Assembly (NCBI RefSeq): GCF_032444005.1
Contig: NC_091285.1
Coordinates: forward strand, 135,594,001-135,658,000
Length of the DNA: 64,000 bases
Direction of reading: 5' to 3'
From: Ranitomeya imitator
Lineage: Eukaryota
Part shown: piece after piece, positions 12,362 through 62,600 of the stretch
Layout of the letters: every line of letters starts with the position of its first letter
How positions within the stretch are numbered: the stretch's first letter is position 1
Notes under the pieces: model-generated
What the model was told of the DNA's origin: nothing
Seen by the model: the letters and a program-made list of their open reading frames with translations, nothing else
Database searches by the model: none
Position numbers and translations under genes: made by a program

Positions 12362-12404
12362 CCACAGACAGCTGTTTTGGGGTATTTGCCCCTCATCAGT
12401 GTGG
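12362..12404 (-). ncRNA. Minimal type I hammerhead ribozyme motif, G12A variant (copy 3)
   Basis: Identical to the 11658-11700 motif. Confidence 0.78.
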
Positions 12405-17033: not shown

Positions 17034-18275
17034 TCTACTATATAATTGTCTAAGGGTCACTTCCGTCTGTCCTTCTGTCTTTCTGTCTGTCACGGATATT
17101 CATTGGTCGCGGGCCTCTGTCTGTCATGGCTGCCGCAACCAATGAGCGATGGCCACAGTCCGATTAGTCCCTCCCTACTCCCCTGCAGTCAGTGCCCGGC
17201 GCCCGCTCCATACTCCCCGCAGTCAGTGCACGCTCCATACTCCCCTCCAGTCAGCGCTCACACAGGGTTAATGACAGCGGTAACAGACCGCGTTATGCCG
17301 TGGGTAACTCACTCCGTTACTGCCGCTATTAACCCTGTGTGACCACGTTTTTACTATTGATGCTGCCTATGCAGCATCAATAGTAAAAAGATCTAATGTT
17401 AAAAATAATTAAAAAACAAAAACAAAAACAAAACCTGCTATTCTCACCTTCCGTAGTCCGATGATGCGTTCACGCCTGCCGCCAGCTTCCGTTCCCAGAG
17501 ATGCATTGTGAAATTACCCAGAAGACTTAGCGGTCTCGCGAGACCGCTAAGTGATCTGGGTAATTTCGCAATGCATCCTGGGAACGCAAGATGGCGGCAG
17601 CCGCGCGCGCATCGCCAGAGGTTCGCTGGATCTACGCTGGATCCCGCTGGGTGAGTATATAACTATTTTTTATTTTAATTATTTTTTTTAACAGGGATAT
17701 GGTGCCCACACTGCTAAATACTACGTGGACTGTGTTAGATACCGCGTGGCTGCTATATGCTACCTGGCCAGTGTTAGATACTATGTGGGCTGTGTTTTAT
17801 ACTGCGTGTGCTGCGTTATATACTACATGGCTGCTATATACTACGTGGGCAGTGTTATATACTACGTGGTTGTGTTCTATACTGCATGCTATATACTACG
17901 TGGCCACTGTTAGATACTATGTGGGCTGTTCTATTTATTACGTGGGCTGTGTTATATATAACGTGGCCAGTGTTACATACTACGTGGGCTGTGTTATATA
18001 CTGCGTGGCTGCTATATACTGCGTGGCTGCTATATACTGTGTGGGCTGTGTTATATACTACATGGGCTGTGTTGTTTACTGCGTGGCCTATATTAACACA
18101 TCGGGTGTTCTACAATATGTCTGTATGTGTATTGCAGCCACATGGTATATACCACAGGCCAAGTAGTACTCCTATATACTATGTAGCCTGTGCAATATAC
18201 TATGTGGCTGCTATATACATACTGTACATACATATTCTAGAATACCCGATGCGTTAGAATCGGGCCACCATCTAG
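17034..18275 (+). mobile_element. Non-autonomous Helitron with internal minisatellite of about 17 bp
   Basis: A|TC 5' end, CTAG|T 3' end, subterminal hairpin CCCGATGCGTTAGAATCGGG, no TSD; CTATATACTACGTGG repeats at about 17715-18225. Confidence 0.9.
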
Positions 18276-24559: not shown

Positions 24560-24950
24560 TTTTTCAGGAACATCAGTAATTGTAGATGGCCATCTGACGA
24601 CTCTTTCTATTGTTAGAGGGCCAGCAGGTCTCTTGTGTACAGATTAGACCAAGATAGAGTTTTTTGGTAAAGCACATAATTCTACTGTTAACTGTAAATG
24701 GAATGAGACCTACAAATAAAAGATGGAGGTTCAAAAATATTTTGGGGTTATTTTGCTGCCTCTGGCTTCGGGTGCTTTGACTGTGTGCAAGGCATCATGA
24801 AATGTGAAGATTACCGACGGATTTTTGGTCACAATGTAGTTCTTGGGGTCACAAAGCTGGATTTGCATCCAAGGTCATGGGTCTTACGGCAGGACCATGA
24901 CCCCAAACATACTTCAAGAACCACCCAGAAATAGATGGAAAAAAATCAAC
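24560..24950 (+). pseudogene. Old Tc1 transposase remnant
   Basis: Decayed homology to the FWGCFAASG...GIMK...[13 protein letters not shown] block of the 27.2-28.9 kb element. Confidence 0.72.
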
Positions 24951-24961
24951 ACTTTTACAAG

Positions 24962-25225
24962 TCTTGCAATATGACTTAGGATAAAAGCAAAATCAATTTG
25001 TAGACACGGTATTTCAGGCTATTGGCCCTCGTCAGTGCAAAGTATGAGAACTGATTTGGCTAGGTGAGAAGCTCTGGACTGGTGTGTAAGGGAGTAACGT
25101 TTCTTGTTGTGGAGAGTGACATACCGGCTCTGGCATGTCAAGGTAAGGAGGATTATTCGCCATGCAATGCTTCTCTTGGAAATTTAATATGCAAACTGCC
25201 TCTTCAGAGAGAAAGAGGCCTTGAA
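24962..25225 (-). repeat. Diverged partial monomer of the 316-bp hammerhead-bearing family
   Basis: Colinear similarity to the reverse complement of 46206-46530 (ATGACTTAGGATAA, AGTGCAAAGT, GGAGAGTGACAT, TATGCAAA, CTCTTCAGAGAG). Confidence 0.8.
24997..25041 (-). ncRNA. Minimal type I hammerhead motif (diverged copy)
   Basis: Minus strand TTTGCA-CTGACGA-GGGC-CAATA-GCCT-GAAA-TACCGTG-TC-TACAAA: intact core, one mismatch in stem I. Confidence 0.72.
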
Positions 25226-27238
25226 CATGGAGTTACATGAGGGGCAGGTAGCCGGACCCAGGTGCAATGCCGGAGTGGATACCTCTGTGATTGGCTCCAT
25301 GTGCTCTCAGTTCCACGGAGGTGACAGCTCATTTGGATGTTGGGAACAAGACAGTCTCCAAGCTTGTGTGAGGGAAACCACTAATCTGTGATGGCATAAT
25401 CACTGTGGCCTTCTGGTACAGAGGGATATGGAATGTTTTTTGTTGGCCCTTCTACTTTATCAGTGGGTTCATCCTTGTGCACTTTTATTTGTGTGGCAAG
25501 CTGCATGATTTTTATACATTCAAAATGGTCAACATGATCGTGGGTTCATAGAAACTAGTATGCCTTACATCCTCTAATAGACAATCTACATAAAACATCT
25601 GTCATGGGAGGCCTGATGGAAAATTTGAATCCTACCATAATGGGAATTTTATGGACGATGTCAATCTCATCCAGGAATTCATGATTAGAGGATCCAAAGC
25701 AGGGCTAGTCTAGGGGAAATGATCCCTTGTCGTATAAATCCTGACTCATTTATTTGTGCCTCGCTGCAGGTGAAACATTCATTTTTAAAAGACAGCATTG
25801 TTATTCTGACCAAAAAAATTACTTTATTATAATACAGAAATTAGCAAATGCAGTATATTGCGGTAGTGGCCAATTGGGTCAGTTAAGAGACTTCACATGT
25901 TGCATTTAAGAGTAGACCATATAATATCAGAGGCCCACGAACCATTCATCTGTACTAGAATGGAATTTCCCTAAAGGAAAGAAAGAAATTTGGAAAACAA
26001 CCAAACACTGGAGAACAGCTGATGGAGTAGCAATAAAATTTGACATAAATTGCCCATTTATGCTACTCAATAAGATTATTAGCTATTAGCAACTATCCAT
26101 TTCTGCCACTATTGCATTTTGTTACTGTAGCTGTAAGTGGACTAAATACACAAAGCCAAAGAAAGGTGGTACATTCATGCACCAAATGGGTAACCATCAA
26201 AGAAGATATTTTCCTGCCCAACGCTAAACATTTTCCAACTTCAGTGAACCTGCTTTGATGTAGAAATCCACTTAAACAAGATGTGAAGATCCTCATTTCA
26301 AGATGAAAGCCTATGTACGCAGTGACTGGGAGTGTACACCAGAGCTGCCGCTACAGAAGCTTCCTTTTAAGCTTCAGACATTGTTTAACTGGTAATTCAA
26401 GTGGTTTTCTGCAGCGGCATATGCATAGTTTTATCAATTGTGGCACTGTTATTGTTTCCATTTCTAGTCCAACCAGCAATTTTCCAGCACTTGAATATTC
26501 TCCACGGCCCAGTAATACAACTTTTTTTCTTGTGACTCACTGTCTGGCTTAAATTAACATGTCTGACACTAACTAAAAAGCCATGTCATATCATGTGGGA
26601 CAATCAACAGAGATAAAATACATTTTATAGATACTAGGCCTAATTCATCATTTGCAGTTTTTTTATCTACCTCTCTTTTCTTTTTATGTCTTGTGGTATT
26701 CTTTAATATTTTTTTGTGCCAAAGTCTTCAAAATGATGGACACTAATTTTATGCAAAATCAAAAATGCTCTTTATTTCTATGTTTAATCGTTTTTGTAGT
26801 GCAAAAAGTCACATAAATTGCTACATTGTGCAAAGTTTGAACCAAAATATCTGGAACGTAAAATCACTCTAAGGGGCTACTGGAGTACAATAGTGTCAAA
26901 TTTGGTGACTTTTTAAAAAGTTGTAATTTATAAATCACCCGAAATCCTCTTCAAACCTCAAGCCCCATCCAGAATAGAAAAAAAATAATAAACAAAATAA
27001 AATGTGAATACATATAAAATAGGCTTTAAAAAGATGCAGATTAACAGAAAAATTAGGCACAAGTAAAGTACAGGGAAAAAACGCAAAAGAAAATACATAT
27101 TTGAATAAAAAATATTATTCTAGATCAGATTAAAAATGCATATATTAGATACAGTGTGTATTCCTTTAATGCTTTGTGTCCTCATGATTGAAGTAACAGG
27201 CTCTGCATACTCTTATTTGTAATAAGAAAATGCAAGTA

Positions 27239-28873
<1,635 letters not shown>

Positions 28874-38122: not shown

Positions 38123-38916
38123 TGTTATGGACCTGGTGGTTAAGAGCACCCGGAATGACCTGATGGTTAAACTCACACAGGACAAGCTCTGGGAAGTGGG
38201 AACTCTGCTGACCGCAACCCCTAATCCAATCACACAACTAGAAATAGCCGTGGAGCGTACCTAACACGACCTAGACGCCTCTTCACAGCCTAAGAGCTAA
38301 CTAGCCCTAAAGATAGAAAATAAAGCCTACCTTGCCTCAGAGAAATTCCCCAAAGGAAAAGGCAGCCCCCCACATATATTGACTGTGAGTTAAGATGAAA
38401 GTCACAAACACAGAGATGAAACAGGTTTCAGCAAAGGGAGGCCAGACTTACTAAACAGACTGAGGATAGAAAAGGTATCTTTGCGGTCAGCACAAAAAAC
38501 TACAAAAAACCATGCAGAGTGTGCAAAAAGACCTCCGCACCGACTCACGGTGCGGAGGTGCCACTCTGCATCCCAGAGCTTCCAGCTAGCAAGACAAAAT
38601 CATGATAGCCAACTGGACAAGGAAACAATGAACAAATAATTAACTAGCAGGGACTTAGCTTCTGCTGGAGTAGACAGGTCACCAGAAAGATCCAAGAGCG
38701 AACTGAACCAGTACAAGAACATTGACAGCTGGCATGGAGTAACGATCTGAGTGGAGTTAAATAGAACAACCAGCCAAAGAATAAACTACGTCACCTGTGG
38801 AAGGAACCTCAGAAGCAGCAGCTCCACTCACAGCCACCAGAGGGAGTCCATGGATAGAACTCGCCAAAGTACCATTCATGACCACAGGAGGGAGTTTGAA
38901 AACAGAATTCACAACA
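38123..38916 (-). repeat. 3' LTR (794 bp)
   Basis: Minus strand TGTTGTGAATTC...CCATAACA, preceded by the polypurine tract. Confidence 0.95.
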
Positions 38917-38928
38917 GTACCCCCCTCT
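38917..38928 (-). other. Polypurine tract
   Basis: Minus strand AAGAGGGGGTAC immediately before the 3' LTR. Confidence 0.85.
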
Positions 38929-38949
38929 TGAGGAGGGGGTCACCGAACC

Positions 38950-39261
38950 CTCACCAGAGCCCCCAGGCCGATCAGGACGAGCCAAATGAAAGGCACGAAC
39001 TAGATCGGCAGCATGAACATCAGAGGCAAAAACCCAGGAATTATCTTCCTGACCATAACTCTTCCACTTGACCAGGTACTGGAGTTTCCGTCTCGAAATA
39101 CGAGAATCCAAAATCTTCTCCACCACATACTCCAACTCCCCCTCGACCAACACCGGGGCAGGAGGATCAACGGAGGGAACCATAGGCGCCACGTATCTCC
39201 GCAATAACGACCTATGGAACACATTATGGATGGCAAAAGAAGCTGGAAGGTCCAAACGAAA
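38950..39261 (-). pseudogene. Integrase C-terminus with chromodomain, cut off from pol by a premature stop
   Basis: IHNVFHRSLL (GPY/F region) then EYVVEKILDSR...YLVKWKSYGQEDNSW chromodomain; TAA after EVLNPV at 39262-39264. Confidence 0.9.
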
Positions 39262-41517
39262 TTACACAGGATTAAGAACTTCAGAAATCTTATATGGCCC
39301 AATGAAACGAGGCTTAAACTTAGGAGAGGAAACCTTCATAGGAACATGACGAGATGACAACCAAACCAAATCCCCAACACGAAGTCGGGGACCAACACAG
39401 CGCCGGCGGTTAGCGAATTGTTGAGCCTTCTCCTGGGACAATGTCAAATTGTCCACCACATGAGTCCAAATCTGCTGCAACCTGTCCACCACCGTATCCA
39501 CACCAGGACAGTCCGAAGGCTCAACCTGTCCTGAAGAGAAACGAGGATGGAAACCAGAATTACAGAAAAAAGACGAAACCAAAGTAGCCGACCTGGCCCG
39601 ATTATTAAGGGCGAACTCAGCCAAAGGCAAGAAGGACACCCAATCATCCTGATCAGCAGAAACAAAGCATCTCAGATATGTCTCCAAAGTCTGATTAGTT
39701 CGTTCGGTTTGGCCATTTGTCTGAGGATGGAAAGCCGAAGAAAAAGACAAATCAATGCCCATCTTAGCACAAAAGGACCGCCAAAACCTTGAAACAAACT
39801 GAGAACCTCTGTCCGAGACAATGTTCTCCGGAATGCCATGCAAACGAACCACATGCTGGAAAAACAATGGCACCAAATCAGAGGAGGAAATATGCGTCCA
39901 GGGCCTCTTCGGGACCGGCAAGGGCAAAAGCAACCCACTGGCACGAGAACAGCAGGGCTTAGCCCGAGCACAAATCCCACAGGACTGCACAAAAGAACGC
40001 ACATCCCGTGACAAAGAAGGCCACCAAAAGGATCTAGCCACCAAATCTCTGGTACCAAAGATTCCAGGATGACCCGCCAACACCGAACAATGAACCTCAG
40101 AGATAACTCTACTAGTCCATCTATCAGGGACAAACAGTTTCTCCGCTGGACAACGGTCAGGTCTATCAGCCTGAAACTTCTGCAGCACGCGCCGCAAATC
40201 AGGGGAGATGGCAGACAAAATTACCCCCTCTTTGAGAATACCCGCCGGCTCAGGAACACCCGGAGAGTCAGGCACAAAACTCCTTGACAGGGCATCAGCC
40301 TTCACATTCCTAGAGCCCGGAAGGTACGAAACCACAAAATCAAAATGGGAGAAAAACAGCGACCATCGAGCCTGTCTAGGATTCAAACGTTTGGCAGACT
40401 CGAGATAAGTCAAGTTCTTATGATCAGTCAATACCACCACGCGATGCTTGGCTCCTTCAAGCCAATATCGCCACTCCTCGAATGCCCACTTCATGGCCAA
40501 CAACTCTCGATTGCCAACATCATAATTGCGCTCAGCAGGCAGGAATTTTCTAGAAAAGAAGGCACATGGTTTCATCACCGAGCCATCAGAACTTCTTTGC
40601 GACAAAACAGCCCCTGCTCCAATCTCAGGAGCATCAACCTCGACCTGAAACGGGAGCGAAACATCTGGCTGGCACAACACAGGGGCAGAAGAAAAATGAC
40701 GCTTCAACTCCTGAAAAGCCTCTACAGCCACCGAGGACCAATTGACCACATCAGCACCTTTCTTGGTCAAATCAGTCAATGGTTTAACAACACTAGAAAA
40801 ATTAGCGATGAAGCGACGGTAAAAATTAGCAAAGCCCAGGAACTTCTGCAGGCTCTTCACAGATGTCGGCTGAGTCCAATCATAAATGGCCTGAACTTTA
40901 ACAGGGTCCATCTCGATAGTAGAAGGGGAAAAAATTAAACCCAAAAATGAAACCTTCTGAACCCCAAAGAGACATTTCGGCCCCTTCACAAACAAGGAAT
41001 TCACACGAAGGACCTGGAACACAATTCTGACCTGCTTCACATGAGACTCCCAATCATCCGAAAAGACCAAAATATCATCTAAATATACAATCATGAATCT
41101 ATCCAGGTACTCTCGGAAGATGTCATGCATAAAGGACTGAAACACAGATGGAGCATTAGAAAGCCCGAATGGCATAACCAGGTACTCAAAATGGCCCTCG
41201 GGCGTATTAAATGCTGTTTTCCATTCATCGCCCTGTTTAATTTGCACAAGATTATACGCCCCTCGAAGATCTATCTTGGTGAACCAACTAGCCCCCTTAA
41301 TCCTAGCAAACAAATCAGACAGCAGCGGCAAAGGGTACTGAAATTTGACTGTGATCTTATTAAGAAGGCGGTAATCAATACAAGGTCTCAAAGAGCCATC
41401 CTTCTTGGCCACAAAAAAGAACCCTGCTCCCAACGGTGATGATGACGGGCGAATATGACCTTTCTCCAAGGATTCCTTTACATAACTCCGCATAGCGGCG
41501 TGCTCTGGCACAGACAA
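39262..41517 (-). pseudogene. pol fragment: reverse transcriptase, RNase H, integrase with internal deletion
   Basis: RPCIDYRLLN, YLDDILVFS, VDAPEIGAGAVLSQ, HHCC zinc finger, VSDRGSQF; the segment normally following WTHIS, including the first catalytic Asp, is missing. Confidence 0.93.
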
Positions 41518-42863
41518 ATCAGTCGGCCCTTAGGAAACTTACTACCAGGAATCAAATTAATAGCACAATCGCAATCCCTATGAGGAGGTAAGGCACCGGA
41601 TTTGGGCTCTTCAAATACATCCCGGTAATCTGACAAAAACTCAGGGACTTCAGAAGGAGTGGAAGGCGAAATTGACAGCAATGGAACATCACCATGAACC
41701 CCCTGACAACCCCAGCCGGACACAGACATAGATTTCCAATCCAGTACTGGATCATGGACCTGTAGCCATGGCAACCCCAAAACGACCACATTATGCAGAT
41801 TATGCAACATCAAAAAGCGAATATCCTCCTGATGTGCAGGAGCCATGCACATGGTCAATTGAGTCCAGTATTGAGGCTTATTCTTGGCCAAAGGCGTAGC
41901 ATCAATTCCTCTCAATGGAATAGGATACTGCAAGGGCTCCAAGAAAAAACCACAGCACCTGGCAAACTCCAAGTCCATCAAATTCAGGGCAGCGCCTGAA
42001 TCCACAAATGCCATAACAGAATAGGACGACAGAGAGCAAATCAGAGTAACGGACAAAAGAAATTTAGACTGTACCGTACCAATGGTGGCAGACCTAGCGA
42101 ACCGCTTAGTGCGCTTAAGACAATCGGAGATAGCATGAGTGAAATCACCACAGTAAAAACACAGTCCATTCCGATGTCTGTGTTCTTGCCGTTCTGCTCT
42201 GGTCAAAGTCCTATCACATTGCATAGGCTCAGGCCTATGCTCAGAGAATACCGCCAAATGGTGCACAGCTTTGCACTCACGCAAGCGCCGATCGATCTGA
42301 ATGGTCAAGGACATAGACTCATTCAGACCAGCAGGCGTGGGAAATCCCACCATGACATCCTTAAGGGCTTCAGAAAGACCCTTTCTGAAAATTGCCGCCA
42401 GGGCACACTCATTCCACTGAGTAAGCACAGACCACTTTCTAAACTTCTGACAGTACACCTCCGCTTCATCCTGACCCTGACACAAAGCCAGCAAGATTTT
42501 CTCTGCCTGATCCACTGAATTTAGTTCATCATAAAGCAATCCAAGCGCCAGAAAAAACGCATTAACATCACGCAATGCAGGATCTCCTGGCGCAAGGGAA
42601 AATGCCCAGTCTTGAGGGTCACCACGCAACAAAGAAATAATGATTTTTACTTGTTGAACGGGGTCACCAGAGGAGCGGGGTTTCAAAGCTAGAAAGAGTA
42701 TACAATTATTTTTGAAATTCAGGAATTTAGATCTATCCCCAGAAAACAAATCAGGAATTGGAATTCTAGGCTCTAACATCGGATTCTGAACCACAAAATC
42801 TTGAATGTTTTGTACCCTTGCCGTGAGATGATCCACACAAGAGGACAGACCCTGAATGTCCAT
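41478..42863 (-). pseudogene. gag-protease part of a formerly single gag-pol ORF, frameshifted at PKGRL
   Basis: MDIQGLSS start (42863), PEG10/RTL1-like capsid, CX2CX4HX4C knuckle CFYCGDFTHAISDC, protease motif FVDSGA. Confidence 0.92.
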
Positions 42864-42988
42864 ATCTACACCTGTGTTCTGAACCACCCAGAGGTTAAGG
42901 GGAAAAGAAAGACAAAAAACACTGCAGAGAAAAAAAAATGGTCTCAGAACTTCTCTTTTCCCTCTATTGAGATGCATTAATACTTTGG

Positions 42989-45439: not shown

Positions 45440-46050
45440 TTTTAATGCAGGCTCCTTTATATTGTATGTAGGACTACCTGGCACCTATAATAATGTATGT
45501 AGGACTATATGGGGCCCATAATAATGTATGGAGGACTATATGGGGCCATATTAATATATAGCTGACTATGTGGGGCACATCATACTGTATGGAGAACTGT
45601 CTTAGACCCATAATACTGTATAGATGATAGTCTGGGGCCCATTATACTGTATGGAGGCCTGTCTGAGGCCCATTATACCGAATGGAGAAATATGTGGGAC
45701 CCATTATACTTGACAGAGGAATATGTGGGGCTCATTATACTTTATGGAGGATTATTCGGGGTCCATTATACTGTGTGGAGGACTATATGGGGCCTTTATA
45801 TTGTTTGCAGGTCAATGTGAATGAGCCATTATATTGTTTGAAGGTCTAAATAGGGGGCAATATACTGTTTTCAAGTATATGAGGAGGGTCATTATACTGT
45901 TTGCAGGACTATGCTTGGGCCATTACACTGTTTGCATTACTACGTGGGTGGGCATTATATTGTTTACAGGTCTATATGGATGTGCTATTATTGCTATTAT
46001 ACTTTTTGCAGGTCTATGTGGAGGAATTATACTGTTTGCAGGGCTATATG
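45440..46050 (+). repeat. Degenerate minisatellite of about 30 bp (CATTATACTGTATGGAGGACTATATGGGGCC-like)
   Basis: Repeated ATTATACTG and TATGTGGGG motifs. Confidence 0.7.
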
Positions 46051-46329
46051 ATGCTCCTCTGAGAAATATGCAAATTGTCTCTTCAGAGAGGAAGTGAACT
46101 AGAACTCTAGTACCACCTATTGGAAGTAGCAATCCTAACAGTCAATGTCGACTCTTTAACGAGCGTTGTCACATGACTTAGGATAATAGCCAAACCAGAA
46201 TCTCAGAGGAGCATTGCGGCTTAAAGTCTCCTCACCTCAACATGCTTATCATGTCACTCTCCGCAAGGAGAAACGATACTTCTTGGATCCCGGTCAGACG
46301 CCTCTCAATCAGCCAAACCAGATCTCCAC

Positions 46330-46374
46330 TTTGCACTGATGAGGGGCAGTACCCCGAAACACAGTGTCTGCAAA
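46330..46374 (+). ncRNA. Intact minimal type I hammerhead ribozyme
   Basis: TTTGCA-CTGATGA-GGGG-CAGTA-CCCC-GAAA-CACAGTG-TC-TGCAAA: complete catalytic core, 6-bp stem I, 4-bp stem II, GUC triplet with predicted cleavage after 46368. Confidence 0.9.
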
Positions 46375-46505
46375 TTGAGATTCTGGTTTGGCTATTATCC
46401 TAAGTCATGTGACAAGGCTCGTTAAAGAGTCGACATTGACTGTTAGGATTGCTACTTCAAATAGGTGGCACCAGAGTTCTAGTTTTCTTCCTCTCTGAAG
46501 AGACA

Positions 46506-46513
46506 ATTTGCAT
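46506..46513 (+). promoter_or_regulatory. Octamer motif (ATTTGCAT) in the 316-bp monomer
   Basis: ATTTGCATATTTCCC is also present in the 352-bp family and in the inverted segment (46068-46075). Function is inferred. Confidence 0.5.
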
Positions 46514-46719
46514 ATTTCCCAGAGGAGCATTGCGGCTTTAAGTCTCCTCACCTCGACATGCTTATCATGTCACTCTCCGCAAGGAGAAACGATCCTTTGT
46601 AAGGGCAGCAAAGCTGTGACATAAGTTCTTCTTTGACCTCACCCAAGTTTTTTTTTTGGGGGGGGAAGCAATTAGAACTTCTGTTTCCATTATTGCTTTG
46701 TACGCCCCTGCCAACCATA

Positions 46720-47095
46720 TTGATGATAGTGAACTTTATTTTTCTCAGGAGCAGCCGGCTTTCAGTCATGCAATTACATTCACCAGTCAGAGAACTGAGA
46801 ATTAGGGTTATAAGCATGTCCCTGCCACTGACTGACAGCTGGCTCTACAGTACATCAGTGCATGCACAGCCGGCTGTCAGTTAGTGCCAGGGCAATCTTA
46901 CTGCCGCCTCTGTCAGTGCTCAGACTGGTGACTGTAATTTCTTTGGGTACACCTGCATGACTGAAAGCCTATAGCTCCCGGGAAAAATAAGGTTAATTTT
47001 CTAAATGGTGCTTCACTTTCAGTAATGTGGCTGGGCACCTTCATAATGTTATTAATCTGCAGGTTATTAGCGTTATTGGACCTGTCAGGTTCCCT
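46720..47095. mobile_element. Partial Kolobok/T2-type MITE (right end only), left boundary approximate
   Basis: Ends CAGGTTCCCT|TTAA like the 48175-48502 MITE; internal inverted repeat; left TIR not found. Confidence 0.5.
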
Positions 47096-53030: not shown

Positions 53031-54225
53031 TAGAGTTGAGCGACCTTGACCTTTTTAGAGTCGAGCCGGGTTTTGCGAAACCCGACTATGTCCAAAGTCG
53101 GGTCGAGTGAAATCGGCCGATTATGACGTAAAGTCGGGATCGACCGAAACACGAAACCCAATGCAAGTCAATGGGGCAGCATAGTCGGCAGTGAGTGGGG
53201 GCCAGGAAAACACCTAGAGTACCCATTTTAATGTCAAAACCATCCATTCTTCTTAATGAAGCTTGTCAAGCGTAATTTACCTTATAATAATTGGAAGGCA
53301 TTTGAAATTGGGGGTCATTTGGCTAAAGTTGTGGGGGGTAGGGCTGGTTCAAGTAATTAGTGGGCCCAGGAAATCTGGACCACGTCACGGCAGTGGAGCA
53401 GGGAGAGGTAAGTATTTCAACTTTGCAAGTGCTGTGAACCTGAGCAAGCAGGGGGGGCCCACTCGTTGGCATTGGCACTGGCACAGGGCCCCTCAAAGTA
53501 CAGCGGTGTGTTTGCACGGCGGGGGCGCCTCCCACCGGCAGCAACACTTTTGCGTACTATGAGAGGCCCTGTGCCAGTGACGTCGCCAACTAGTATTCCT
53601 CCCCCCACCTGATGAAGGAACCTGCACTTTCATCTGCACCTTCCTCTTTGTCCCCGTGTAAGGTGGTATGGTATGCGGGAAGAGCAACCTGACTTTCAGC
53701 AGGGTCACAATGTTGTTGTGTAGCGTGCACGGGGAATGTTGCGTTATGGGGCAATGTACCAGCAGACTCATCTATCACTGGCTGGGCAATGGGCACGATG
53801 AAGTGGAAACACAGATATAGGCCCAAAGAAGAAAGTGGGCTAAATGCAGTTCAAAATTGGTAACACAGGAATAACCAGGGGGGCATTGCAGTGGAGGACA
53901 ACTGGAATGAGAGGCTGACACAGAGAGTAGGGCCAAATCAGTAAGTAGTCGAAATGCAGTTCAAAATTGGCAACCGTAGTAAACAGGCGGCACAGCTTTG
54001 TTCAGTGGAGGAGAACAGCAAGGAGTGGCAGACACCGATAGTAGGCCCCAACCCAACTAGTAGGCCAAATGCAGTCTAACATTAACAACTACTTAACGAG
54101 AGGCTGAAAATGGAATTTCAGGACAGGAAACCAGGAGAACAGCAAGGAGTGGCAGACACCGATAGTAGGCCCCAAACCAACTAGTACGCCAAATGCAGTT
54201 GTTCCATTTAACCACAATTTAATGA

Positions 54226-55965
54226 GAGCCTGAAGATCGAAGTTCAGGAAAGGCAACCTGGGGAACACCTTGGAGTGTAACACACCATCTCTCTCCACCC
54301 CATACCCATTTTTTAGGCCTAATGCAGTGTACTTTTCTACAACTACTAAACGAGAGTCGGAAGACCGAAGCAATGGCAAGGAAACCTGGGGAACACCTTG
54401 GAGTGTAACACACCATCTCTCTCCACCCCATTCCCCATTTTTTAGGCCTAATGCAGCCTACTTTCCGACACCTACTAAACGAGAGCATGAAGATCGAAGC
54501 TCAGGAAAGGCAACCTGGGGAACACCTTGGAGTGTAACACACCATCTCTCTCCACCCCATACCCATTTTGTAGGCCTAATGCTGTGTACTTTTCTACAAC
54601 TACTAAACGAGAGTCGGAAGACCGAAGCAATGGCAAGGAAACCTGGGGAACACCTTGGAGTGTAACACACCATCTCTCTCCACCCCATACCCAATTTGTA
54701 GGCCTAATGCAGCCTACTTTCCGACACCTACTAAACGAGAGCATGAAGATCGAAGCTCAGGAAAGGCAACCTGGGGAACACCTTGGAGTGTAACACACCA
54801 TCTCTCTCCACCCCATACCCAATTTGTAGGCCTAATGCAGCCTACTTTCCGACACCTACTAAACGAGAGCATGAAGATCGAAGCTCAGGAAAGGCAACCT
54901 GGGGAACACCTTGGAGTGTAACACACCATCTCTCTCCACCCCATACCCATTTTTTAGGCCTAATGCAGTGTACTTTTCTACAACTACTAAACGAGAGTCG
55001 GAAGACCGAAGCAATGGCAAGGAAACCTGGGGAACACCTTGGAGTGTAACACACCATCTCTCTCCACCCCATTCCCCATTTTTTAGGCCTAATGCAGCCT
55101 ACTTTCCGACACCTACTAAACGAGAGCATGAAGATCGAAGCTCAGGAAAGGCAACCTGGGGAACACCTTGGAGTGTAACACACCATCTCTCTCCACCCCA
55201 TACCCATTTTGTAGGCCTAATGCTGTGTACTTTTCTACAACTACTAAACGAGAGTCGGAAGACCGAAGCAATGGCAAGGAAACCTGGGGAACACCTTGGA
55301 GTGTAACACACCATCTCTCTCCACCCCATACCCATTTTGTAGGCCTAATGCTGTGTACTTTTCTACAACTACTAAACGAGAGTCGGAAGACCGAAGCAAT
55401 GGCAAGGAAACCTGGGGAACACCTTGGAGTGTAACACACCATCTCTCTCCACCCCATACCCAATTTGTAGGCCTAATGCAGTGTACTTTTCTACAACTAC
55501 TAAACGAGAGTCGGAAGACCGAAGCAATGGCAAGGAAACCTGAGGAACACCTTGGAGTGTAACACACCATCTCTCTCCACCCCATTCCCCATTTTTTAGG
55601 CCTAATGCAGCCTACTTTCCGACACCTACTAAACGAGAGCATGAAGATCGAAGCTCAGGAAAGGCAACCTGGGGAACACCTTGGAGTGTAACACACCATC
55701 TCTCTCCACCCCATACCCATTTTGTAGGCCTAATGCAGCGTACTATTCTACAACTACTAAACGAGAGCATGAAGATCGAAGCTCAGGAAAGGCAACCTGG
55801 TGAAAACCTTGGAGTGTAACACAACCTGTCTCTACACCCCATACCAAATTTGTAGGCCTAATGCAGCGTAGTTTCCACCAACTACTAAACGAGAGCCGGA
55901 AGATCGAAGCTCATGAAAGGCAACCCGGGGAACACCTTGGAGTGTAACACAACCTCTCTCTACAC
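54226..55965 (+). repeat. 128/129-bp tandem array (about 14 units, two main variants, 641-bp higher-order repeat)
   Basis: GGAGTGTAACAC recurs every 128-129 bp; identical 131-aa ORFs at 54270 and 54911 mark the higher-order repeat. Confidence 0.95.
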
Positions 55966-57815
55966 CACGAAAGGGCTGATTCTTAGGAAGGAAGGCTGTT
56001 GTAAATAAGCATTGCGCGTCCGAGGGTGATTATATTCTTATTCGGTATCTACTCACCCTCGGACGCGCCATGCTTCTTGATTTGTAATTAATGTTTATTT
56101 GCAATGTGCTTTTGACTTACTCAATTATTTTTTTAATTATTGATTTTATTAAATTAATAGTTTAACATCTTATTGGAAATAATTTAAAGGAGACGCGACA
56201 GGACAACACTCGGTGGATGCCATATCTGTGTTAACAACTCCAAAAAACTTTCAGTTAACTTCTTGCAGGAGAAAGAAATTGTAGCTGTTGGACCTTTGTA
56301 GTACAGTTCCATATATTTGTTGTGTGTTTGTTTTGATTGTTAAAATGTCTGCATTTGAGATCTCAACACGATCTTATTTTTTATAATCAAATTAATTTTT
56401 TAAATATTTTATTAGGTTGGTTCAAGGGGTACACGGGCCGCAGTAGACAGGTCAGTGGAGGCCTAGTGGAAGGAGGGACCGCAGATGCGCCACTGTTTCA
56501 CCCATACACAATTAGTAGGCCTAATGCAGCGTAGTTTCCAACAGCTACTAAACGAGAGCCGGAAGATCGAAGCTCAGGAAAGGCAACCTGGGGAACACCT
56601 TGGAGTGTAACACAACCTCTCTCTACACCACGGAAGGGCTGATTCTTAGGAAGGAAGGCTGTTTTAAATAAGCATTGCGCGTCCGAGGGTGATTATATTC
56701 TTATTCGGTATCTACTCACCCTCGGACGCGCCATGCTTCTTGATTTGTAATTAATGTTTATTTGCAATGTGCTTTTGACTTACTCAATTATTTTTTTAAT
56801 TATTGATTTTATTAAATTAATAGTTTAACATCTTATTGGAAATAATTTAAAGGAGACGCGACAGGACAACACTCGGTGGATGCCATATCTGTGTTAACAA
56901 CTCCAAAAAACTTTCAGTTAACTTCTTGCAGGAGAAAGAAATTGTAGCTGTTGGACCTTTGTAGTACAGTTCCATATATTTGTTGTGTGTTTGTTTTGAT
57001 TGTTAAAATGTCTGCATTTGAGATCTCAACACGATCTTATTTTTTATAATCAAATTAATTTTTTAAATATTTTATTAGGTTGGTTCAAGGGGTACACGGG
57101 CCGCAGTAGACAGGTCAGTGGAGGCCTAGTGGAAGGAGGGACCGCAGATGCGCCACTGTTTCACCCATACACAATTAGTAGGCCTAATGCAGCGTAGTTT
57201 CCAACAGCTACTAAACGAGAGCCGGAAGATCGAAGCTCAGGAAAGGCAACCTGGGGAACACCTTGGAGTGTAACACAACCTCTCTCTACACCACGGAAGG
57301 GCTGATTCTTAGGAAGGAAGGCTGTTTTAAATAAGCATTGCGCGTCCGAGGGTGATTATATTCTTATTCGGTATCTACTCACCCTCGGACGCGCCATGCT
57401 TCTTGATTTGTAATTAATGTTTATTTGCAATGTGCTTTTGACTTACTCAATTATTTTTTTAATTATTGATTTTATTAAATTAATAGTTTAACATCTTATT
57501 GGAAATAATTTAAAGGAGACGCGACAGGACAACACTCGGTGGATGCCATATCTGTGTTAACAACTCCAAAAAACTTTCAGTTAACTTCTTGCAGGAGAAA
57601 GAAATTGTAGCTGTTGGACCTTTGTAGTACAGTTCCAGATATTTGTTGTGTGTTTGTTTTGATTGTTAAAATGTCTGCATTTGAGATCTCAACACGAACT
57701 TATTTTTTATAATCAAATTAATTTTTTTTATATTTAATGATGTTGGTTCAAGGGGTACACAGGCAGCAATAGACAGGTCAGTGGAGGCCTAGTGGAAGGA
57801 GTGACGGCAGACAGG
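55850..57815 (+). repeat. 663-bp tandem array (3 units)
   Basis: Identical 65-aa ORFs at 56337 and 57000; third copy from about 57178. Confidence 0.95.
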
Positions 57816-57819
57816 CATC

Positions 57820-59185
57820 AAAGGCCTAACATTGGGCTGGCTGTAGGCAAGTTAAAATTGGTTCCAGGGGAACACGGCCATCAGTGGCCTGGTCAGTGTA
57901 GTTGTAGTTGAAAGAACGGGACGCAGACAGGCTTCGAAGGCCTAACATAATAACATAGGGCTGGCTGTAGGCAAGTTAAAATTGGTTCCAGGGGAACACG
58001 GCCATCAGTGGCCTGGTCAGTGTAGTTGTAGTTGAAAGAACGGGACGCAGACAGGCTTCGAAGGCCTAACATAACAAACTTGGGCTGGCTGTAGGCACTT
58101 TTAAATTGGTTCCAGGGGTACACGGGCAGCAGTGGTCTGGTCTGTGGAAGTCTAGTGGAAGGAGTGACCGCAGACAGGCTTCGAAGGCCTAACATAACAA
58201 ACTTGGGCTGGCTGTAGGCACTTTTAAATTGGTTCCAGGGGTACACGGGCAGCAGTGGTCTGGTCAGTGGAAGTCTAGTGGAAGGAGTGACCGCAGACAG
58301 GCTTCCAAGGCCTAACATAACAAACTTGGGCTGGCTGTAGGCACTTTTAAATTGGTTCCAGGGGTACACGGGCAGCAGTGGTCTGGTCAGTGGAAGTCTA
58401 GTGGAAGGAGTGACCGCAGACAGGCTTCCAAGGCCTAACATAACAAACTTGGGCTGGCTGTAGGCACTTTTAAATTGGTTCCAGGGGTACACGGGCAGCA
58501 GTGGTCTGGTCTGTGGAAGTCTAGTGGAAGGAGTGACCGCAGACAGGCTTCGAAGGCCTAACATAACAAACTTGGGCTGGCTGTAGGCACTTTTAAATTG
58601 GTTCCAGGGGTACACGGGCAGCAGTGGTCTGGTCAGTGGAAGTCTAGTGGAAGGAGTGACCGCAGACAGGCTTCCAAGGCCTAACATAACAAACTTGGGC
58701 TGGCTGTAGGCACTTTTAAATTGGTTCCAGGGGTACATGGGCAGCAGTGGTCTGGTCAGTGGAAGTCTAGTGGAAGGAGTGACCGCAGACAGGCTTCCAA
58801 GGCCTAACATAACAAACTTGGGCTGGCTGTAGGCACTTTTAAATTGGTTCCAGGGGTACACGGGCAGCAGTGGTCTGGTCTGTGGAAGTCTAGTGGAAGG
58901 AGTGACCGTAGACAGGCTTCGAAGGCCTAACATAACAAACTTGGGCTGGCTGTAGGCACTTTTAAATTGGTTCCAGGGGTACACGGGCAGCAGTGGTCTG
59001 GTCAGTGGAAGTCTAGTGGAAGGAGTGACGGCAGACAGTCTTCGAAGGCCTAACATAACAAAATTGGGCTGACTGTAGGCACTTTTAAATTGGTTCCAGG
59101 GTAACACGGCCAGCAGTGGCCTGGTCAGTGTAGTAGTTGTAGAAAGAAGGGACCGCAGACAGGCTTCGAAGGCCTAACATAACAA
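57820..59185 (+). repeat. 123-bp tandem array (about 11 units)
   Basis: GGAAGTCTAGTGGAAG at 58146, 58269, 58392, 58515, 58638, 58761, 58884 and 59007; a 41-aa repeat in the minus-strand frame. Confidence 0.95.
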
Positions 59186-59646
59186 AAATGTCAAAACAAT
59201 GGTATTGTCAGTGCCAGGCATTGAAGGATGTCAGCGCCTAGACTACACATTGGTGAAGCTGTGAGAGATAATTTTGCTAGTGGTAGAGCACTGTTTGAGC
59301 TGGGGGGGGGAACTGTCTTGTGGCCGGCGGTACAGGCACAGGGCCCCTCATATTACAACGGTGTGTCTGACGTTGGGTGCGCACCACCACCGCCAGAGAC
59401 ACTTTATTGTACTATGAGGGACCCAGTGGCAGTGCCGTCGACCAAAAGCGGCCACACCCACCTCTTCAGACAAACAGCACTCTCAAGGGTCCAAGCGCAA
59501 AGTGGCGATAGCACGGCCCCGTGTGGGGAGTTTGGCCATTTCGTGAGGTGGAAACATGTCGTATGCTGGACAATCAGGTGAAGAAAATTACGAGATTGGA
59601 AAAGTCATTCAGAATAGTCCACAGGCAAGACCTTTTCATAGGAAAG

Positions 59647-62600
59647 CTAGGTGTCAGCCGGGCAGGGTGGGGCAAAAGATTTTGAAATCCAGTTGTGGTT
59701 CATTTTAATGAAGGTTAGATCATCTACATTTTGGGTAGCCAGACGAGTCCTTTTTTCTGTTAGTATTGAACCTGCAGCACTGAATACTCTTTCTGATAGG
59801 ACACTAGCTGCCGGGCAAGCAAGCTCCTGCAATGCATATTCTGCCAATTCTGGCCAGGTGTCTAATTTGGATGCCCAGTAATCAAATGGGAATGACGGTT
59901 GAGGGAGAATGTCGATAAGGGATGAAAAATAGTTTGTAACCATACTGGACAAATGTTGTCTCCTGTCACTTTGAATTGATGCTGCAGTACCTGTCCTGTC
60001 TGCGGTCATAGAAAAATCACTCCACAACCTGGTCAGAAAACCCCTCTGGCCAACGCCACTTCTGATTTCTGCCCCTCTAACACCTCTGGTCTGCTGGCCC
60101 CTGGAGCTCGTGTGAGAACGATCACGGGCGCTGTGTGCAGGGAATGCCAGAAGCAAACGGTCAACAAGAGTTGATTGTTTTGTTGCTAATATTAGTTCCA
60201 AGTTCTCATGTGGCATAATATTTTGCAATTTGCCTTTATAGCGAGGATCAAGGAGGCAGGCCAACCAGTAATCGTCATCGTTCATCATTTTTGTAATGCG
60301 TGTGTCCCTTTTGAGGATACGCAAGGCATAATCCGCCATGTGGGCCAAAGTTCCCGTTGTCAAATCTGCGGTTGTGCTTGGTTGAGGGGCAGTTGCAGGC
60401 AAATCTACGTCACTTGTGTCCCTCAAAAAACCAGAACCCGGCCTTGCCACGCCACCAATTTCCCGTGCCCCCGGGAAAGCTTCCTCATTAAAAATATACT
60501 CATCCCCATCATCCTCCTCATCCTCCACCTCCTCTTCGCCCGGTACCTCGTCATGTACACTGCCCTGACCAGACAATCGCTGACTGTCATCAAGGCTTTC
60601 CTCTTCCTCTGGTGCAGACGCCTGATCCTTTATGTGCGTCAAACTTTGCATCAGCAGACGCATTAGGGGGATGCTCATGCTTATTATGGCGTTGTCTGCA
60701 CTAACCAGCCGTGTGCATTCCTCAAAACACTGAAGGACTTGACACATGTCTTGAATCTTCGACCACTGCACACCTGACAACTCCATGTCTGCCATCCTAC
60801 TGCCTGCCCGTGTATGTGTATCCTCCCACAAAAACATAACAGCCCGCCTCTGTTCGCACAGTCTCTGAAGCATGTGCAGTGTTGAGTTCCACCTTGTTGC
60901 AACGTCTATGATTAGGCGATGCTGGGGAAGGTTCAAAGAACGCTGATAGGTCTGCATACGGCTGGAGTGTACAGGCGAACGGCGGATATGTGCGCAAAGT
61001 CCACGCACTTTGAGGAGCAGGTCGGATAACCCCGGATAACTTTTCAGGAAGCACTGCACCACCAGGTTTAAGGTGTGAGCCAGGCAAGGAATGTGTTTCA
61101 GTTGGGAAAGGGAGATGGCAGCCATGAAATTCCTTCCGTTATCACTCACTACCTTGCCTGCCTCAAGATCTACAGTGCCCAGCCACGACTGCGTTTCTTG
61201 CTGCAAGAACTCGGACAGAACTTCCGCGGTGTGTCTATTGTCGCCCAAACACTTCATAGCCAATACAGCCTGCTGACGTATGCCAGTAGCTGCCCCATAA
61301 TGGGAGACCTGGTGTGCAACAGTGGCAGGTGCGGATGGAGTGTTTGTGCGACTGCGGTCTGTGGACGAGCTCTTGCTTCTGCAGGAGGACGAGGAGGAGG
61401 AGGAGGAGGAGGGGGTGCGAACGGCTACAGACAACTGTTTACTAGACCGTGGGCTAGGCAGAACTGTCCCAAACTTGCTGTCCCCTGTGGACCCTGAATC
61501 CACCACATTTACCCAGTGTGCCGTGATGGACACGTAACGTCCCTGGCCATGCCTACTGGTCCATGCATCTGTTGTCAGGTGCACCTTTGTGCTCACAGAT
61601 TGCCTGAGTGCATGGACGATGCGCTCTTTAACATGCTGGTGGAGGGCTGGGATGGCTTTTCTGGAAAAAAAGTGTCGACTGGGTAGCTCGTAGCGTGGTA
61701 CAGCGTAGTCCATCAGGTCTTTGAAAGCTTCGCTTTCAACTAACCGGTAGGGCATCATCTCTAACGAGATTAGTCTAGCTATGTGGGCGTTCAAACCCTG
61801 TGTACGCGGATGCGAGGCTAAGTATTTCCTTTTTCTAACCATAGTCTCATGTAGGGTGAGCTGGACTGGAGAGCTGGAGATCGTGGAACTAGCGGGGGTG
61901 CCGGTGGACATGGCAGACTGAGAGACGGTGGGAGATGGTATTGTTGCCGCCGGTGCCCTAGATGCAGTGTTTCCTACTACGAAACTGGTGATTCCCTGAC
62001 CCTGACTGCTTTGGCCTGGCAAAGATACCTGCACAGATACAGCAGGTGGTGCGCTAAATGGTGGTCCTACACTGCCGGAAGGGATGTTGCGTTGATGACT
62101 AGCTTCATTGGCCGAGGGTGCAACAACCTTAAGGGACGTTTGGTAGTTAGTCCAAGCTTTCAAATGCATGGTGGTTAAATGTCTATGCATGCAACTAGTA
62201 TTGAGACTTTTCAGATTCTGACCTCTGCTTAAGGAAGTAGAACATTTTTGACAGATGACTTTGCGCTGATCAATTGGATGTTGTTTAAAAAAATGCCAGA
62301 CTGCACTCTTTCTAGCATCGGATACCTTTTCAGGCATTGCAGACTGAGCTTTAACCGGATGGCCACGCTGTCCTCCACCAGGTTTTGGCTTTGCCACGCG
62401 TTTTGGGCAAGATACGGGCCCGGCAGATGGAACCTGTGGCGATGTTGATGCCTGCTGCGGCCCCTCCTCCTCCTCTGCTTCAGAACTGCTGCCGCCTGCA
62501 CCCTGTTCCCCCAATGGCTGCCAATCGGGGTCAAGAACTGGGTCATCTAATAACTCTTCTTGTACCTCCTGCGCAACTTCGTCTGTGTCACCGTGTCGTT

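What the first reader, a model, noticed from the sequence alone, without database searches (positions are those of the whole stretch)
46051..46593. Intact hammerhead ribozyme inside a circularly permuted 316-bp non-coding retroelement with a 5' inversion
Seen: a complete minimal type I hammerhead (46330-46374) within a forward segment of about 1.2 monomers (72-bp terminal direct repeat), preceded by an inverted copy of the region that begins about 8 nt downstream of the predicted cleavage site. Established: short hammerhead-bearing monomers of this size are the design of newt satellite 2 and metazoan non-LTR retrozymes, which give circular or multimeric RNAs and are thought to be mobilised by Penelope-like elements; 5' inversions are a hallmark of PLE insertions. 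Inference: this is a frog retrozyme family, inserted by reverse transcription running more than once around a circular or multimeric RNA. The one-nucleotide stem III loop predicts cleavage as a dimer.
Basis: partly seen in the sequence, partly recalled or inferred. Interest (0 to 1): 0.85.

Follow-up and report, generated by a model that had tools for sequence, protein, structure and literature searches.

The report
Frog hammerhead retrozyme copy, Penelope-style insertion
This is a real but ordinary copy of a very abundant, protein-free mobile repeat of frogs that carries a self-cutting hammerhead RNA motif, pasted in with one arm inverted as Penelope-type retroelements are; the kind is already described in amphibians.

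Summary
Window 46051-46597 holds 1.26 forward units of a 316-bp non-coding repeat (46201-46597). A 155-nt inverted copy of unit positions 176-316 plus 1-14 precedes it (46051-46205), joined through 5 shared letters. A hammerhead with every invariant core nucleotide lies at 46330-46374, with the predicted cut after C46368. My descriptor finds two such motifs in the window against 0.02 expected; the second is in an old, differently permuted copy at 24946-26226 minus-strand region (24946-25226). Rfam thresholds miss both.

Public contigs show a family with sharp limits at 46051 and 46597-99 and 18,787 matching contigs in one DNA run. Its commonest variant is the one free core position, N7.

The layout (partial tandem plus adjacent inverted 5'-truncated copy) is the published insertion signature of Penelope-like elements. 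Non-LTR retrozymes are already reported in all seven sampled Amphibia, with a mean unit of 316 bp. This scan already noted the same 316-nt design elsewhere in this genome.

This locus has only one forward ribozyme, so it cannot release a monomer: it is a dead-end copy. Its internal duplicates differ by about 5%, and I found no target duplication. Transcription, circles and cleavage remain untested. It is a good example, not a discovery.

The parts
46051..46205 (-). Inverted 5' arm: reverse complement of unit positions 176-316 followed by 1-14 of the next unit. Its inner end lies 8-12 nt from the hammerhead cut site.
   Evidence: I1: 155 nt, 95% complementary to 46376-46530; 7 mismatches listed
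46201..46205 (.). Inversion joint: the letters TCTCA fit both the inverted arm (complement of 46376-46380) and the start of the forward unit, giving a 5-nt microhomology.
   Evidence: three-way comparison of unit positions 1-14
46201..46516 (+). One complete 316-bp non-coding unit (unit positions 1-316).
46517..46597 (+). Partial second unit (positions 1-81), which forms the terminal direct repeat; 4 mismatches to 46201-46281.
   Evidence: depth drops from about 79,000 to 18 after 46599
46330..46374 (+). Type I hammerhead ribozyme motif: helix I 6 bp, helix II 4 bp with loop CAGUA, short palindromic helix III. Predicted cut after C46368.
   Evidence: descriptor, 0.02 expected; weak Rfam match to a hammerhead model; dimer fold; core conserved across the family; only N7 and 11.1 vary
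46311..46393 (+). Extended helix I: 25-nt arms with an internal loop that close the ribozyme and the folded monomer.
   Evidence: I5, 80% complementary; circular fold -95.7 kcal/mol, z -3.9
46506..46521 (+). Conserved box TTTGCATATTTCCCA holding the octamer ATTTGCAT. It is shared exactly with the otherwise diverged 352-bp hammerhead family at 11852-11866 and 12204-12218. A mirror copy lies at 46060-46075 in the inverted arm.
   Evidence: (4 matches, all in hammerhead elements, 0.46 expected)
24946..25226 (-). Second, old copy of the same family (unit positions 276-316 then 1-233, about 72% identical). Its own hammerhead at 25041-24997 keeps all invariant core letters.

Best explanation
Window 46051-46597 is one insertion of a very high-copy, non-autonomous, hammerhead-bearing retroelement of a frog, that is a non-LTR retrozyme with a 316-nt unit.

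Inferred life cycle, taken from the literature on this class. Tandem master copies are transcribed into multimeric RNA. The hammerheads pair two by two through their palindromic helix III and cut after the GUC. The 316-nt monomers can then be ligated into circles. RNA of more than one unit length, either multimer or circle, is copied into the genome by the reverse transcriptase and GIY-YIG endonuclease of a Penelope-like element.

Proposed history of this copy:
- Both nicked target strands primed cDNA.
- The right-hand cDNA started near unit position 81 and ran back 397 nt, through an uncut ribozyme site, to position 1.
- The left-hand cDNA started at position 14 and ran back 155 nt. It stopped 8-12 nt short of the position that a ribozyme cut would make the RNA's 5' end.
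- The two cDNAs were joined at a 5-nt microhomology.

The result is a partial tandem with an adjacent inverted 5'-truncated arm. With only one forward hammerhead, the locus cannot excise a monomer, so it is a dead-end copy. It has since drifted: its internal duplicates differ by about 5%.

Shown here: the anatomy, the motif, the family and its abundance, conservation of the core, and the predicted dimer fold. Inferred: transcription, cleavage, circles, the PLE as the mobilising enzyme, and the order of events.
For: Anatomy:
- Direct repeat at spacing 316 and a 155-nt inverted arm.
- A 5-nt overlap at the joint.

Motif:
- All invariant hammerhead letters are present. The descriptor hits only this element and its old relative, against 0.02 expected.
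- Between the two copies of the family, 7 of 8 differences inside the motif are structurally neutral: N7, loops, G.U wobbles, and one G-C to C-G swap at 10.4/11.4. None of the 13 invariant letters changed, although overall identity is only about 72%.
- Against the 352-bp family, helix I changed by three double compensatory changes (UUUGCA/UGCAAA against CCACA/UGUGG).

Family:
- 18,787 contigs of one DNA run lie on 46054-46599 at 88% or more.
- Summed depth is 1e5-1e6 against roughly 20-400 in both flanks.
- Contigs bridge both junctions of this locus (records 1 and 8).
- The commonest variant in the ribozyme is T>C at 46340, which is N7, the one free core position.
- A 'goes back 316' joint in three runs shows forms longer than one unit elsewhere.
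- The best-supported true contig ends are at 46288 (unit position 88) and at 46067 (position 314 on the other strand). Both are 3' ends in unit orientation, with long, diverse, AT-rich flanks. That is fixed 3' ends with variable 5' ends, as target-primed reverse transcription gives.

Other properties:
- Non-coding, GC 46%.
- The circular monomer folds to -95.7 kcal/mol, z -3.9.
- The two-copy co-fold gives the double hammerhead at -78.2 against 2 x -37.4 kcal/mol. The single-copy fold pairs the core CUG with the helix III loop.

Literature:
- The PLE insertion signature, AT-rich targets and extension of both strands.
- Retrozymes in all sampled Amphibia, related to PLE pLTRs, mean unit 316 bp.
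- Amphibian hammerheads work as dimers.
Against: - I found no target-site duplication at 46050/46598.
- The two outer ends (unit positions 14 and 81) do not sit exactly on the family's commonest ends (314 and 88-90).
- No run that holds the sequence is on record as RNA. Expression is therefore not shown, and contigs cannot show RNA ends or circles.
- No Penelope-like ORF lies in this window. The long ORFs are hAT, Ty3/gypsy and Tc1. That PLEs exist in this genome rests on unchecked notes of this scan.
- Rfam thresholds are not reached.
- The closeness of the inversion joint to the cut site is a single observation, with roughly a 4% chance of arising at random.
- In the only PLE studied in vitro, ribozyme cleavage was not needed for insertion.
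Confidence: 0.85

Rival explanations
1. The sequence is only the terminal part (pLTR) of a longer coding Penelope-like element, 5'-truncated on insertion, and not a separate non-autonomous family.
For: Hammerheads sit in PLE pLTRs, and Xenopus retrozymes are sister to pLTRs. The insertion architecture is the PLE one.
Against: The sequence wraps round after exactly 316 nt with no ORF between the repeats. The old copy at 24946-25226 crosses the same wrap point. A 'goes back 316' joint occurs in other runs. No frame stays open through the unit.
Confidence: 0.05
2. It is a piece of tandem satellite DNA rearranged at the DNA level (local inversion and duplication), not a retrotransposed copy.
For: No TSD was found. 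The element abuts a 31-bp minisatellite, which is a recombination-prone context.
Against: Thousands of contigs end at the same unit positions with diverse AT-rich flanks, which indicates dispersed insertions. Both arms are equally diverged, at 4.5% and 4.9%. The tandem-plus-inverted layout recurs in this genome according to the scan's notes and is the known PLE pattern.
Confidence: 0.05
3. Two independent insertions of the same family landed back to back in opposite orientation.
For: The family is very abundant.
Against: The two arms abut with a 5-nt overlap and no spacer. They have the same divergence. The inverted arm and the first forward unit share T at unit position 3, where the second unit has C.
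Confidence: 0.03
4. The hammerhead is a chance match with no ribozyme history.
For: Rfam gives no hit at gathering and only 17 bits in E-value mode. The lone motif does not fold as a hammerhead.
Against: Only 0.02 descriptor hits are expected per window. The core is invariant across copies that are 72% identical, and there are compensatory changes in helices I and II. Family-wide variation is confined to N7 and 11.1.
Confidence: 0.01

Closest known systems
Non-LTR retrozymes of vertebrates (Cervera & de la Pena 2020, PMC7229834; Li, Clavereau & Pollet 2026, bioRxiv 10.64898/2026.07.22.740005)
   Same: A small non-coding unit (316 bp, which equals the reported amphibian mean). A type I hammerhead with a 6-bp helix I, a 4-bp helix II and a short palindromic helix III that calls for a dimer. 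GC under 50%, very high copy number, and a well-paired monomer fold.
   Different: This locus is not a tandem array with two or more ribozymes. It has 1.26 units and a single ribozyme plus an inverted arm, so it fails Li et al.'s criterion for an 'active' retrozyme. No TSD was found, and RNA and circles are not shown. I could not check whether this species' family is in the published sets.
Newt satellite 2 / axolotl Rtz331 and Rtz353
   Same: A unit of about 330 nt, a dimer-dependent type I hammerhead, and an amphibian host. The unit holds an octamer (ATTTGCAT), and newt satellite 2 is reported to use an snRNA-type promoter (Coats et al. 1994, as cited in PMC2220036).
   Different: I did no sequence comparison with the newt or axolotl units, because I held no such sequences. 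Helix III here is 3 bp with a triloop, whereas HHR_Amex1 is described as 1 bp with a tetraloop. A promoter role for the octamer is untested.
Penelope-like element insertions (pLTR, inverted 5'-truncated copy, tail)
   Same: A partial tandem plus an adjacent inverted 5'-truncated copy. Family 3' ends are fixed at two sites and flanks are AT-rich. The element sits next to a simple repeat.
   Different: No RT or GIY-YIG ORF. The two family 3' ends are about 90 nt apart, against the 30-40-bp tail described for PLEs. The hammerhead is of the canonical metazoan type, not the min-HHR with a long helix II described for PLE pLTRs.
LINE-1 5' inversions by twin priming
   Same: An inverted 5' segment joined to the forward segment at a short microhomology, with a small overlap (14 nt) between the two segments.
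   Different: No poly(A) tail and no LINE. The template is longer than one unit of a ribozyme-bearing repeat.

Membership tests
Hammerhead ribozyme, type I | Invariant core C3 U4 G5 A6 N7 G8 A9, G12 A13 A14, A15.1-U16.1, H17 not G, flanked by helices I, II and III, with helix I open | tested here: met
   Sequence read. The descriptor scan returns 46330-46374 with 6/6 helix I pairs and 4/4 helix II pairs, against 0.02 hits expected by chance.
Hammerhead ribozyme, type I | Reaches the curated Rfam score of a hammerhead model | tested here: not met
   No hit at gathering. In E-value mode the only hit is RAGATH-1-hammerhead at 17 bits against 56.3. The short helix III explains this; the published surveys use descriptors instead.
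Hammerhead ribozyme, type I | Helices kept by compensatory change among relatives | tested here: met
   10.4/11.4 changes G-C to C-G, and there are two G.U changes between the two copies of the family. Helix I shows three double changes against the 352-bp family. The sample is small, with three distinct sequences.
Hammerhead ribozyme, type I | Self-cleavage at the predicted site | not testable with these tools
   Only folds are available. The dimer co-fold gives a double hammerhead; the monomer fold is inactive.
Non-LTR retrozyme | Small (about 170-400 nt) non-coding repeat unit with a type I hammerhead and without LTR, PBS or PPT | tested here: met
   316-bp unit. No open frame runs through the unit, and GC is 46%.
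Non-LTR retrozyme | Tandem copies with at least two ribozymes (needed to release a monomer) | tested here: not met
   This locus has 1.26 units and one forward hammerhead. Forms longer than one unit exist elsewhere in the runs ('goes back 316'). The family may therefore meet the criterion, but this copy does not.
Non-LTR retrozyme | Expressed as linear and circular RNA of unit length | not testable with these tools
   No holder run is on record as RNA. Contigs cannot show circles or RNA ends.
Non-LTR retrozyme | Target-site duplication longer than 4 bp, when present | tested here: not met
   No ungapped shared word between the flanks at 46050 and 46598. The nearest resemblance, TTTGCAGGGC against TTTGTAAGGGC, is gapped and not adjacent to the 5' end.
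Non-LTR retrozyme | Co-occurs with, and is related to the pLTR of, Penelope-like elements | not tested
   No PLE ORF among the long ORFs of the window. Full-length PLEs in this genome are reported only in unchecked notes of the scan.
PLE-type insertion architecture | Partial tandem (pseudo-LTR) with an inverted 5'-truncated copy directly at the 5' end | tested here: met
   compared with the description in PMC8557442.
PLE-type insertion architecture | Fixed 3' ends at internal initiation sites ('tail') and AT-rich targets | tested here: inconclusive
   Family contig ends pile up at unit positions 88-90 and 314 with AT-rich flanks (table 7). Only the best-supported ends are listed, and this copy's own ends (81 and 14) are 7 and 16 nt off.

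The most novel reading that the evidence does not exclude
The box TTTGCATATTTCCCA, which holds the octamer ATTTGCAT, is the only block besides the ribozyme region that is shared letter for letter by the 316-bp and 352-bp hammerhead families of this window. It also lies where insertions end: the family end at unit position 314, the outer end of the inverted arm 9 nt beyond it, and both ends of the 352-bp array beside it. It could be the cis signal that these protein-free elements need. That signal might be the internal site where the Penelope-like reverse transcriptase binds and starts, or an snRNA-type promoter element as reported for newt satellite 2. If so, the inversion joint 8-12 nt from the cut site would also mean that self-cleaved RNA served as template for one arm.
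Probability: 0.25. Interest if true: 0.45.

Novelty: new member of a known kind. Interest (0 to 1): 0.2.

Why it matters
The finding adds one well-resolved example to a class that is already described, namely amphibian non-LTR retrozymes that ride on Penelope-like elements. Its use is illustrative. One locus shows the intact ribozyme core, the wrap-round of the unit, the inverted arm and a microhomology joint close to the ribozyme's cut site. That fits the in vitro finding that a PLE protein primes cDNA on both target strands. It opens no new question, and the scan has already reported the same 316-nt design elsewhere in this genome.

Tried and rejected
- Rfam at gathering over the whole window gave nothing. 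In E-value mode on 45900-46750 it gave only a weak RAGATH-1-hammerhead match.
- The TSD search across both junctions found no shared word.
- Two exact-pattern scans of metagenome contigs, for the ribozyme core and for helix I 3' plus flank, looking for further copies with flanks, each gave 0 hits.
- The search of earlier findings by sequence came back blank.
- The RNA status of the small runs X10, X17 and X19 is unknown. They cover the element and not the flanks, but low-coverage DNA would do the same for a high-copy repeat. I therefore claim no expression.
- Pfam on the eight longest ORFs found no PLE RT or GIY-YIG, only hAT, Ty3/gypsy and Tc1.
- The supplement of Li et al. that is held is an oligo order form with no retrozyme sequences. 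Their amphibian species list is not in the main text.
- Coats et al. 1994 (PMC308520) is not held, so the snRNA-type promoter of newt satellite 2 is cited second-hand.
- The ungapped MAFFT alignment of the five hammerheads misaligns the 352-bp family, whose loop 2 is one letter longer. I compared the helices by eye instead of running pair counts.
- A MITE or fold-back DNA transposon reading is rejected. The right arm is not terminal, since 67 more nt of the next unit follow it, and the unit wraps round.

Full report
**What is there**

The stretch 46051-46597 has three parts.
- A forward segment 46201-46597 holds one complete 316-bp unit (46201-46516) and the first 81 nt of a second unit (46517-46597). 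The second is 95% identical to 46201-46281.
- In front of it, 46051-46205 is the reverse complement of 46376-46530 (155 nt, 95% complementary). In unit coordinates, with 46201 as position 1, this arm covers positions 176-316 and then 1-14 of the next unit.
- The letters TCTCA at 46201-46205 fit both the end of the inverted arm and the start of the forward unit, so the joint is a 5-nt microhomology.

The terminal repeat is 81 nt rather than 72, and the element ends at 46597-46599.

**The ribozyme**

46330-46374 reads TTTGCA CTGATGA GGGG-cagta-CCCC GAAA CAC-a-GTG TC / TGCAAA.
- Every invariant hammerhead position is present: C3-A9, G12-A14, A15.1-U16.1, C17 and G10.1-C11.1. The cut is predicted after C46368.
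- I wrote a descriptor requiring CTGANGA, a 4-bp helix II, GAAA, A15.1...U16.1-H17, and at least 5 of 6 helix I pairs. It hits only this site and 25041-24997 on the minus strand. The expectation is 0.02 per random window.
- Helix I continues as 25-nt arms with an internal loop (46311-46335 / 46369-46393). The motif therefore resembles the canonical metazoan type I hammerhead (helix I 6 bp, helix II 4 bp, short palindromic helix III; PMC4209133) more than a bare minimal core.
- A one-letter loop cannot close helix III. The realistic choices are 3 bp with a CAG triloop, or an intermolecular 4+4-bp helix in a dimer.
- Alone, the region folds with the core CUG paired to the helix III loop, an inactive shape.
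- Two copies co-fold into a domain-swapped double hammerhead. Both cores are unpaired and helix III is intermolecular, at -78.2 kcal/mol against 2 x -37.4.
- This agrees with what is published for amphibian hammerheads (Forster et al. 1988 and the axolotl data, as described in PMC7229834).
- Rfam does not call the motif. There is nothing at gathering. In E-value mode the best is a 17-bit match to RAGATH-1-hammerhead against a threshold of 56.3. The published surveys use descriptors for the same reason.

**It is a family, and a large one**

Laying the contigs of four public runs on 45950-46700 gave the following.
- In the DNA run X1, 18,787 contigs lie on the element at 88% or more. Summed depth is 1e5 to 1e6 between 46054 and 46599, against roughly 20-400 in the flanks. 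The limits are as sharp as the repeat analysis predicts.
- Contigs bridge both junctions of this very locus (records 1 and 8).
- Inside the ribozyme, the listed family variants are T>C at 46340 (75% of depth) and C>T at 46355 (9%). The first is N7, the one core position free to vary. The second turns G10.1-C11.1 into G.U. Other parts of the unit carry far more variable sites.
- A joint that 'goes back 316' occurs in three runs, so forms longer than one unit exist elsewhere.
- The best-supported true contig ends, with long, heterogeneous, AT-rich loose parts, are at 46288 (unit position 88) and at 46067. The latter, on the inverted arm, is position 314 read in unit orientation.
- Both of these are 3' ends, and no 5' end stands out. 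This is the pattern of target-primed reverse transcription from fixed start sites with variable 5' truncation. It also fits the AT-rich target preference of a PLE endonuclease (PMC11167929).
- These statistics come from contigs, and only the best-supported rows are listed, so I treat them as indications.

**Other copies in the window**

- An old copy lies at 24946-25226 on the minus strand, about 72% identical. It covers positions 276-316 and then 1-233, so it crosses the same wrap point and has different ends.
- Its hammerhead differs from the focal one at 8 of 45 positions. These are N7, two loop letters, two changes to G.U, a G-C to C-G swap at 10.4/11.4, and one change that breaks a helix I pair. 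None of the 13 invariant letters changed.
- A 352-bp tandem array at 11518-12556 (2.9 units) belongs to a second hammerhead family. Its helix I is CCACA/UGUGG, three double changes away from UUUGCA/UGCAAA.
- In all three units of that array G12 is A (CCCC-AAAA-C), which should cripple catalysis.

**The unit itself**

- It is non-coding. The longest stop-free run in a trimer is 78 codons, and the longest ATG-started ORF is 53 codons. GC is 46%.
- As a circle it folds to -95.7 kcal/mol, z = -3.9 against dinucleotide shuffles.

**How this copy was most likely made**

- A partial tandem with an inverted 5'-truncated copy directly at its 5' end is the textbook layout of Penelope-like element insertions (Craig et al. 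2021, PMC8557442).
- The only PLE protein studied in vitro nicks and extends both target strands. It starts reverse transcription at internal sites of the RNA (Frangieh et al. 2024, PMC11167929).
- I therefore propose two cDNAs. One was primed on the bottom strand, starting near position 81 and running back 397 nt through an uncut ribozyme site. The other was primed on the top strand, starting at position 14 and running back 155 nt.
- The second cDNA stops 8-12 nt short of the 5' end that a ribozyme cut would create. This is suggestive of a self-cleaved template, but it is a single observation with about a 4% chance expectation.
- The two ends were joined at a 5-nt microhomology.
- At unit position 3 the inverted arm and the first forward unit share T, while the second unit has C. 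This fits both arms having copied the same unit of one multimeric RNA, but it is a single site.
- The template was longer than one unit. Whether it was a linear multimer or a circle copied more than once round cannot be told from this locus.

**Condition of this copy**

- The internal duplicates differ by 4.9% (4 of 81) and 4.5% (7 of 155). The private changes are spread over both members, and one is a CpG transition.
- The copy is therefore not young. I give no date because I have no rate for this species.
- I found no target duplication.
- The element abuts a 31-bp minisatellite (45457-46050) that does not resume on the other side. A target deletion or an edge insertion is therefore possible. 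PLEs are reported to favour simple repeats.
- With one forward hammerhead the locus cannot release a monomer. By the criterion of Li et al. [quoted passage not shown]

**What is known already**

- Hammerhead repeats of about 330 bp in newts date from 1987.
- About 9,000 minimal hammerheads were reported in Xenopus tropicalis in 2014.
- Non-LTR retrozymes giving circular RNAs of 170-400 nt were described in 2020, including 126,247 motifs in the axolotl.
- A 2026 preprint finds non-LTR retrozymes in all seven sampled amphibians, with a mean unit of 316 bp. It reports 57 families in Xenopus and a sister relation to PLE pLTRs.
- This scan's own notes, which I have not checked, record many such insertions in this same genome, called a poison frog in one note. 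They include a ~316-nt unit with a 5' inversion and a 14-bp TSD on another piece, and full-length PLEs.
- The scan has therefore found this before on other DNA.

**One detail worth keeping**

- Besides the ribozyme region, the 316-bp and 352-bp families share exactly the box TTTGCATATTTCCCA. All four matches in the window lie in hammerhead elements, against 0.46 expected. The box holds the octamer ATTTGCAT.
- The box lies where insertions end: the family end at position 314, the inverted arm's outer end 9 nt beyond it, and both ends of the 352-bp array beside it.
- Part of the 316 family carries a 5-nt insertion inside the box (copy B; loose ends at 46517). Only TTTGCATATT is therefore general.
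- It might be a start or binding site for the PLE enzyme. It might instead be part of an snRNA-type promoter such as newt satellite 2 is said to use (Coats et al. 1994, as cited in PMC2220036). Both ideas are untested.

**Verdict**

The thing is a further, decayed, dead-end member of a known class, so I score its interest low.

Noticed in passing
window 11518-12556 (-): A 352-bp tandem array (2.9 units, 96% matches) of a second hammerhead family. In all three units the core reads CCCC-AAAA-C instead of GAAA, which is G12 to A and should cripple catalysis. Helix III is the palindrome ACAGCTGT. The first unit lacks about 60 nt including the octamer box, and the array ends 3 nt before that box.
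   Followed up: partly
window 11852-11866, 12204-12218, 46060-46074, 46507-46521: The box TTTGCATATTTCCCA (holding the octamer ATTTGCAT) is shared exactly by the 316-bp and 352-bp families, which are otherwise alike only around the ribozyme. All 4 matches in the window are in these elements, against 0.46 expected.
   Followed up: partly
window 24946-25226 (-): An old, differently permuted copy of the 316-bp family (positions 276-316 then 1-233, about 72% identity). Its hammerhead still meets the descriptor.
   Followed up: yes
window 45457-46050: A 31-bp minisatellite (about 19 units, unit TTATACTGTATGGAGGACTATCTGGGGCCCA) ends exactly at the element's 5' junction and does not resume after 46597. 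A similar TATACTG-rich array lies at 17711-18088.
   Followed up: no
window 700-949: An interstitial, degenerate telomere-like array (CCCTAA)n, about 37 units at 66-70% matches.
   Followed up: no
window 38809-42977 (-): Ty3/gypsy-type retrotransposon ORFs. A 751-aa ORF carries RVT_1, RNase H, the integrase zinc domain and rve; a 499-aa ORF has weak gag and aspartyl protease matches.
   Followed up: no
window 59647-63225 (-): A long open frame of 1192 aa with a BED zinc finger and the hAT C-terminal dimerisation domain, so a hAT transposase that looks intact. Tc1/mariner transposase pieces lie at 9497-10405 (+) and 27907-28536 (-).
   Followed up: no
window 54224-55966 and 57832-59186: Two further tandem arrays. 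One has a 128/385-bp period (4.5 units of 385, 91%). The other has a 123-bp period (11 units, 95%). A 404-aa ORF through the second gives only repeat-driven spurious Pfam matches.
   Followed up: no
runs X10, X17 laid on window 46364-46502: Contigs of 770 and 795 nt in two runs begin their match at 46364-46366, within 3 nt of the predicted cut site. Unrelated sequence ending in CCCAAAAAAA precedes the match. This is possibly a copy whose 5' end is the ribozyme cut site, or a composite repeat.
   Followed up: no
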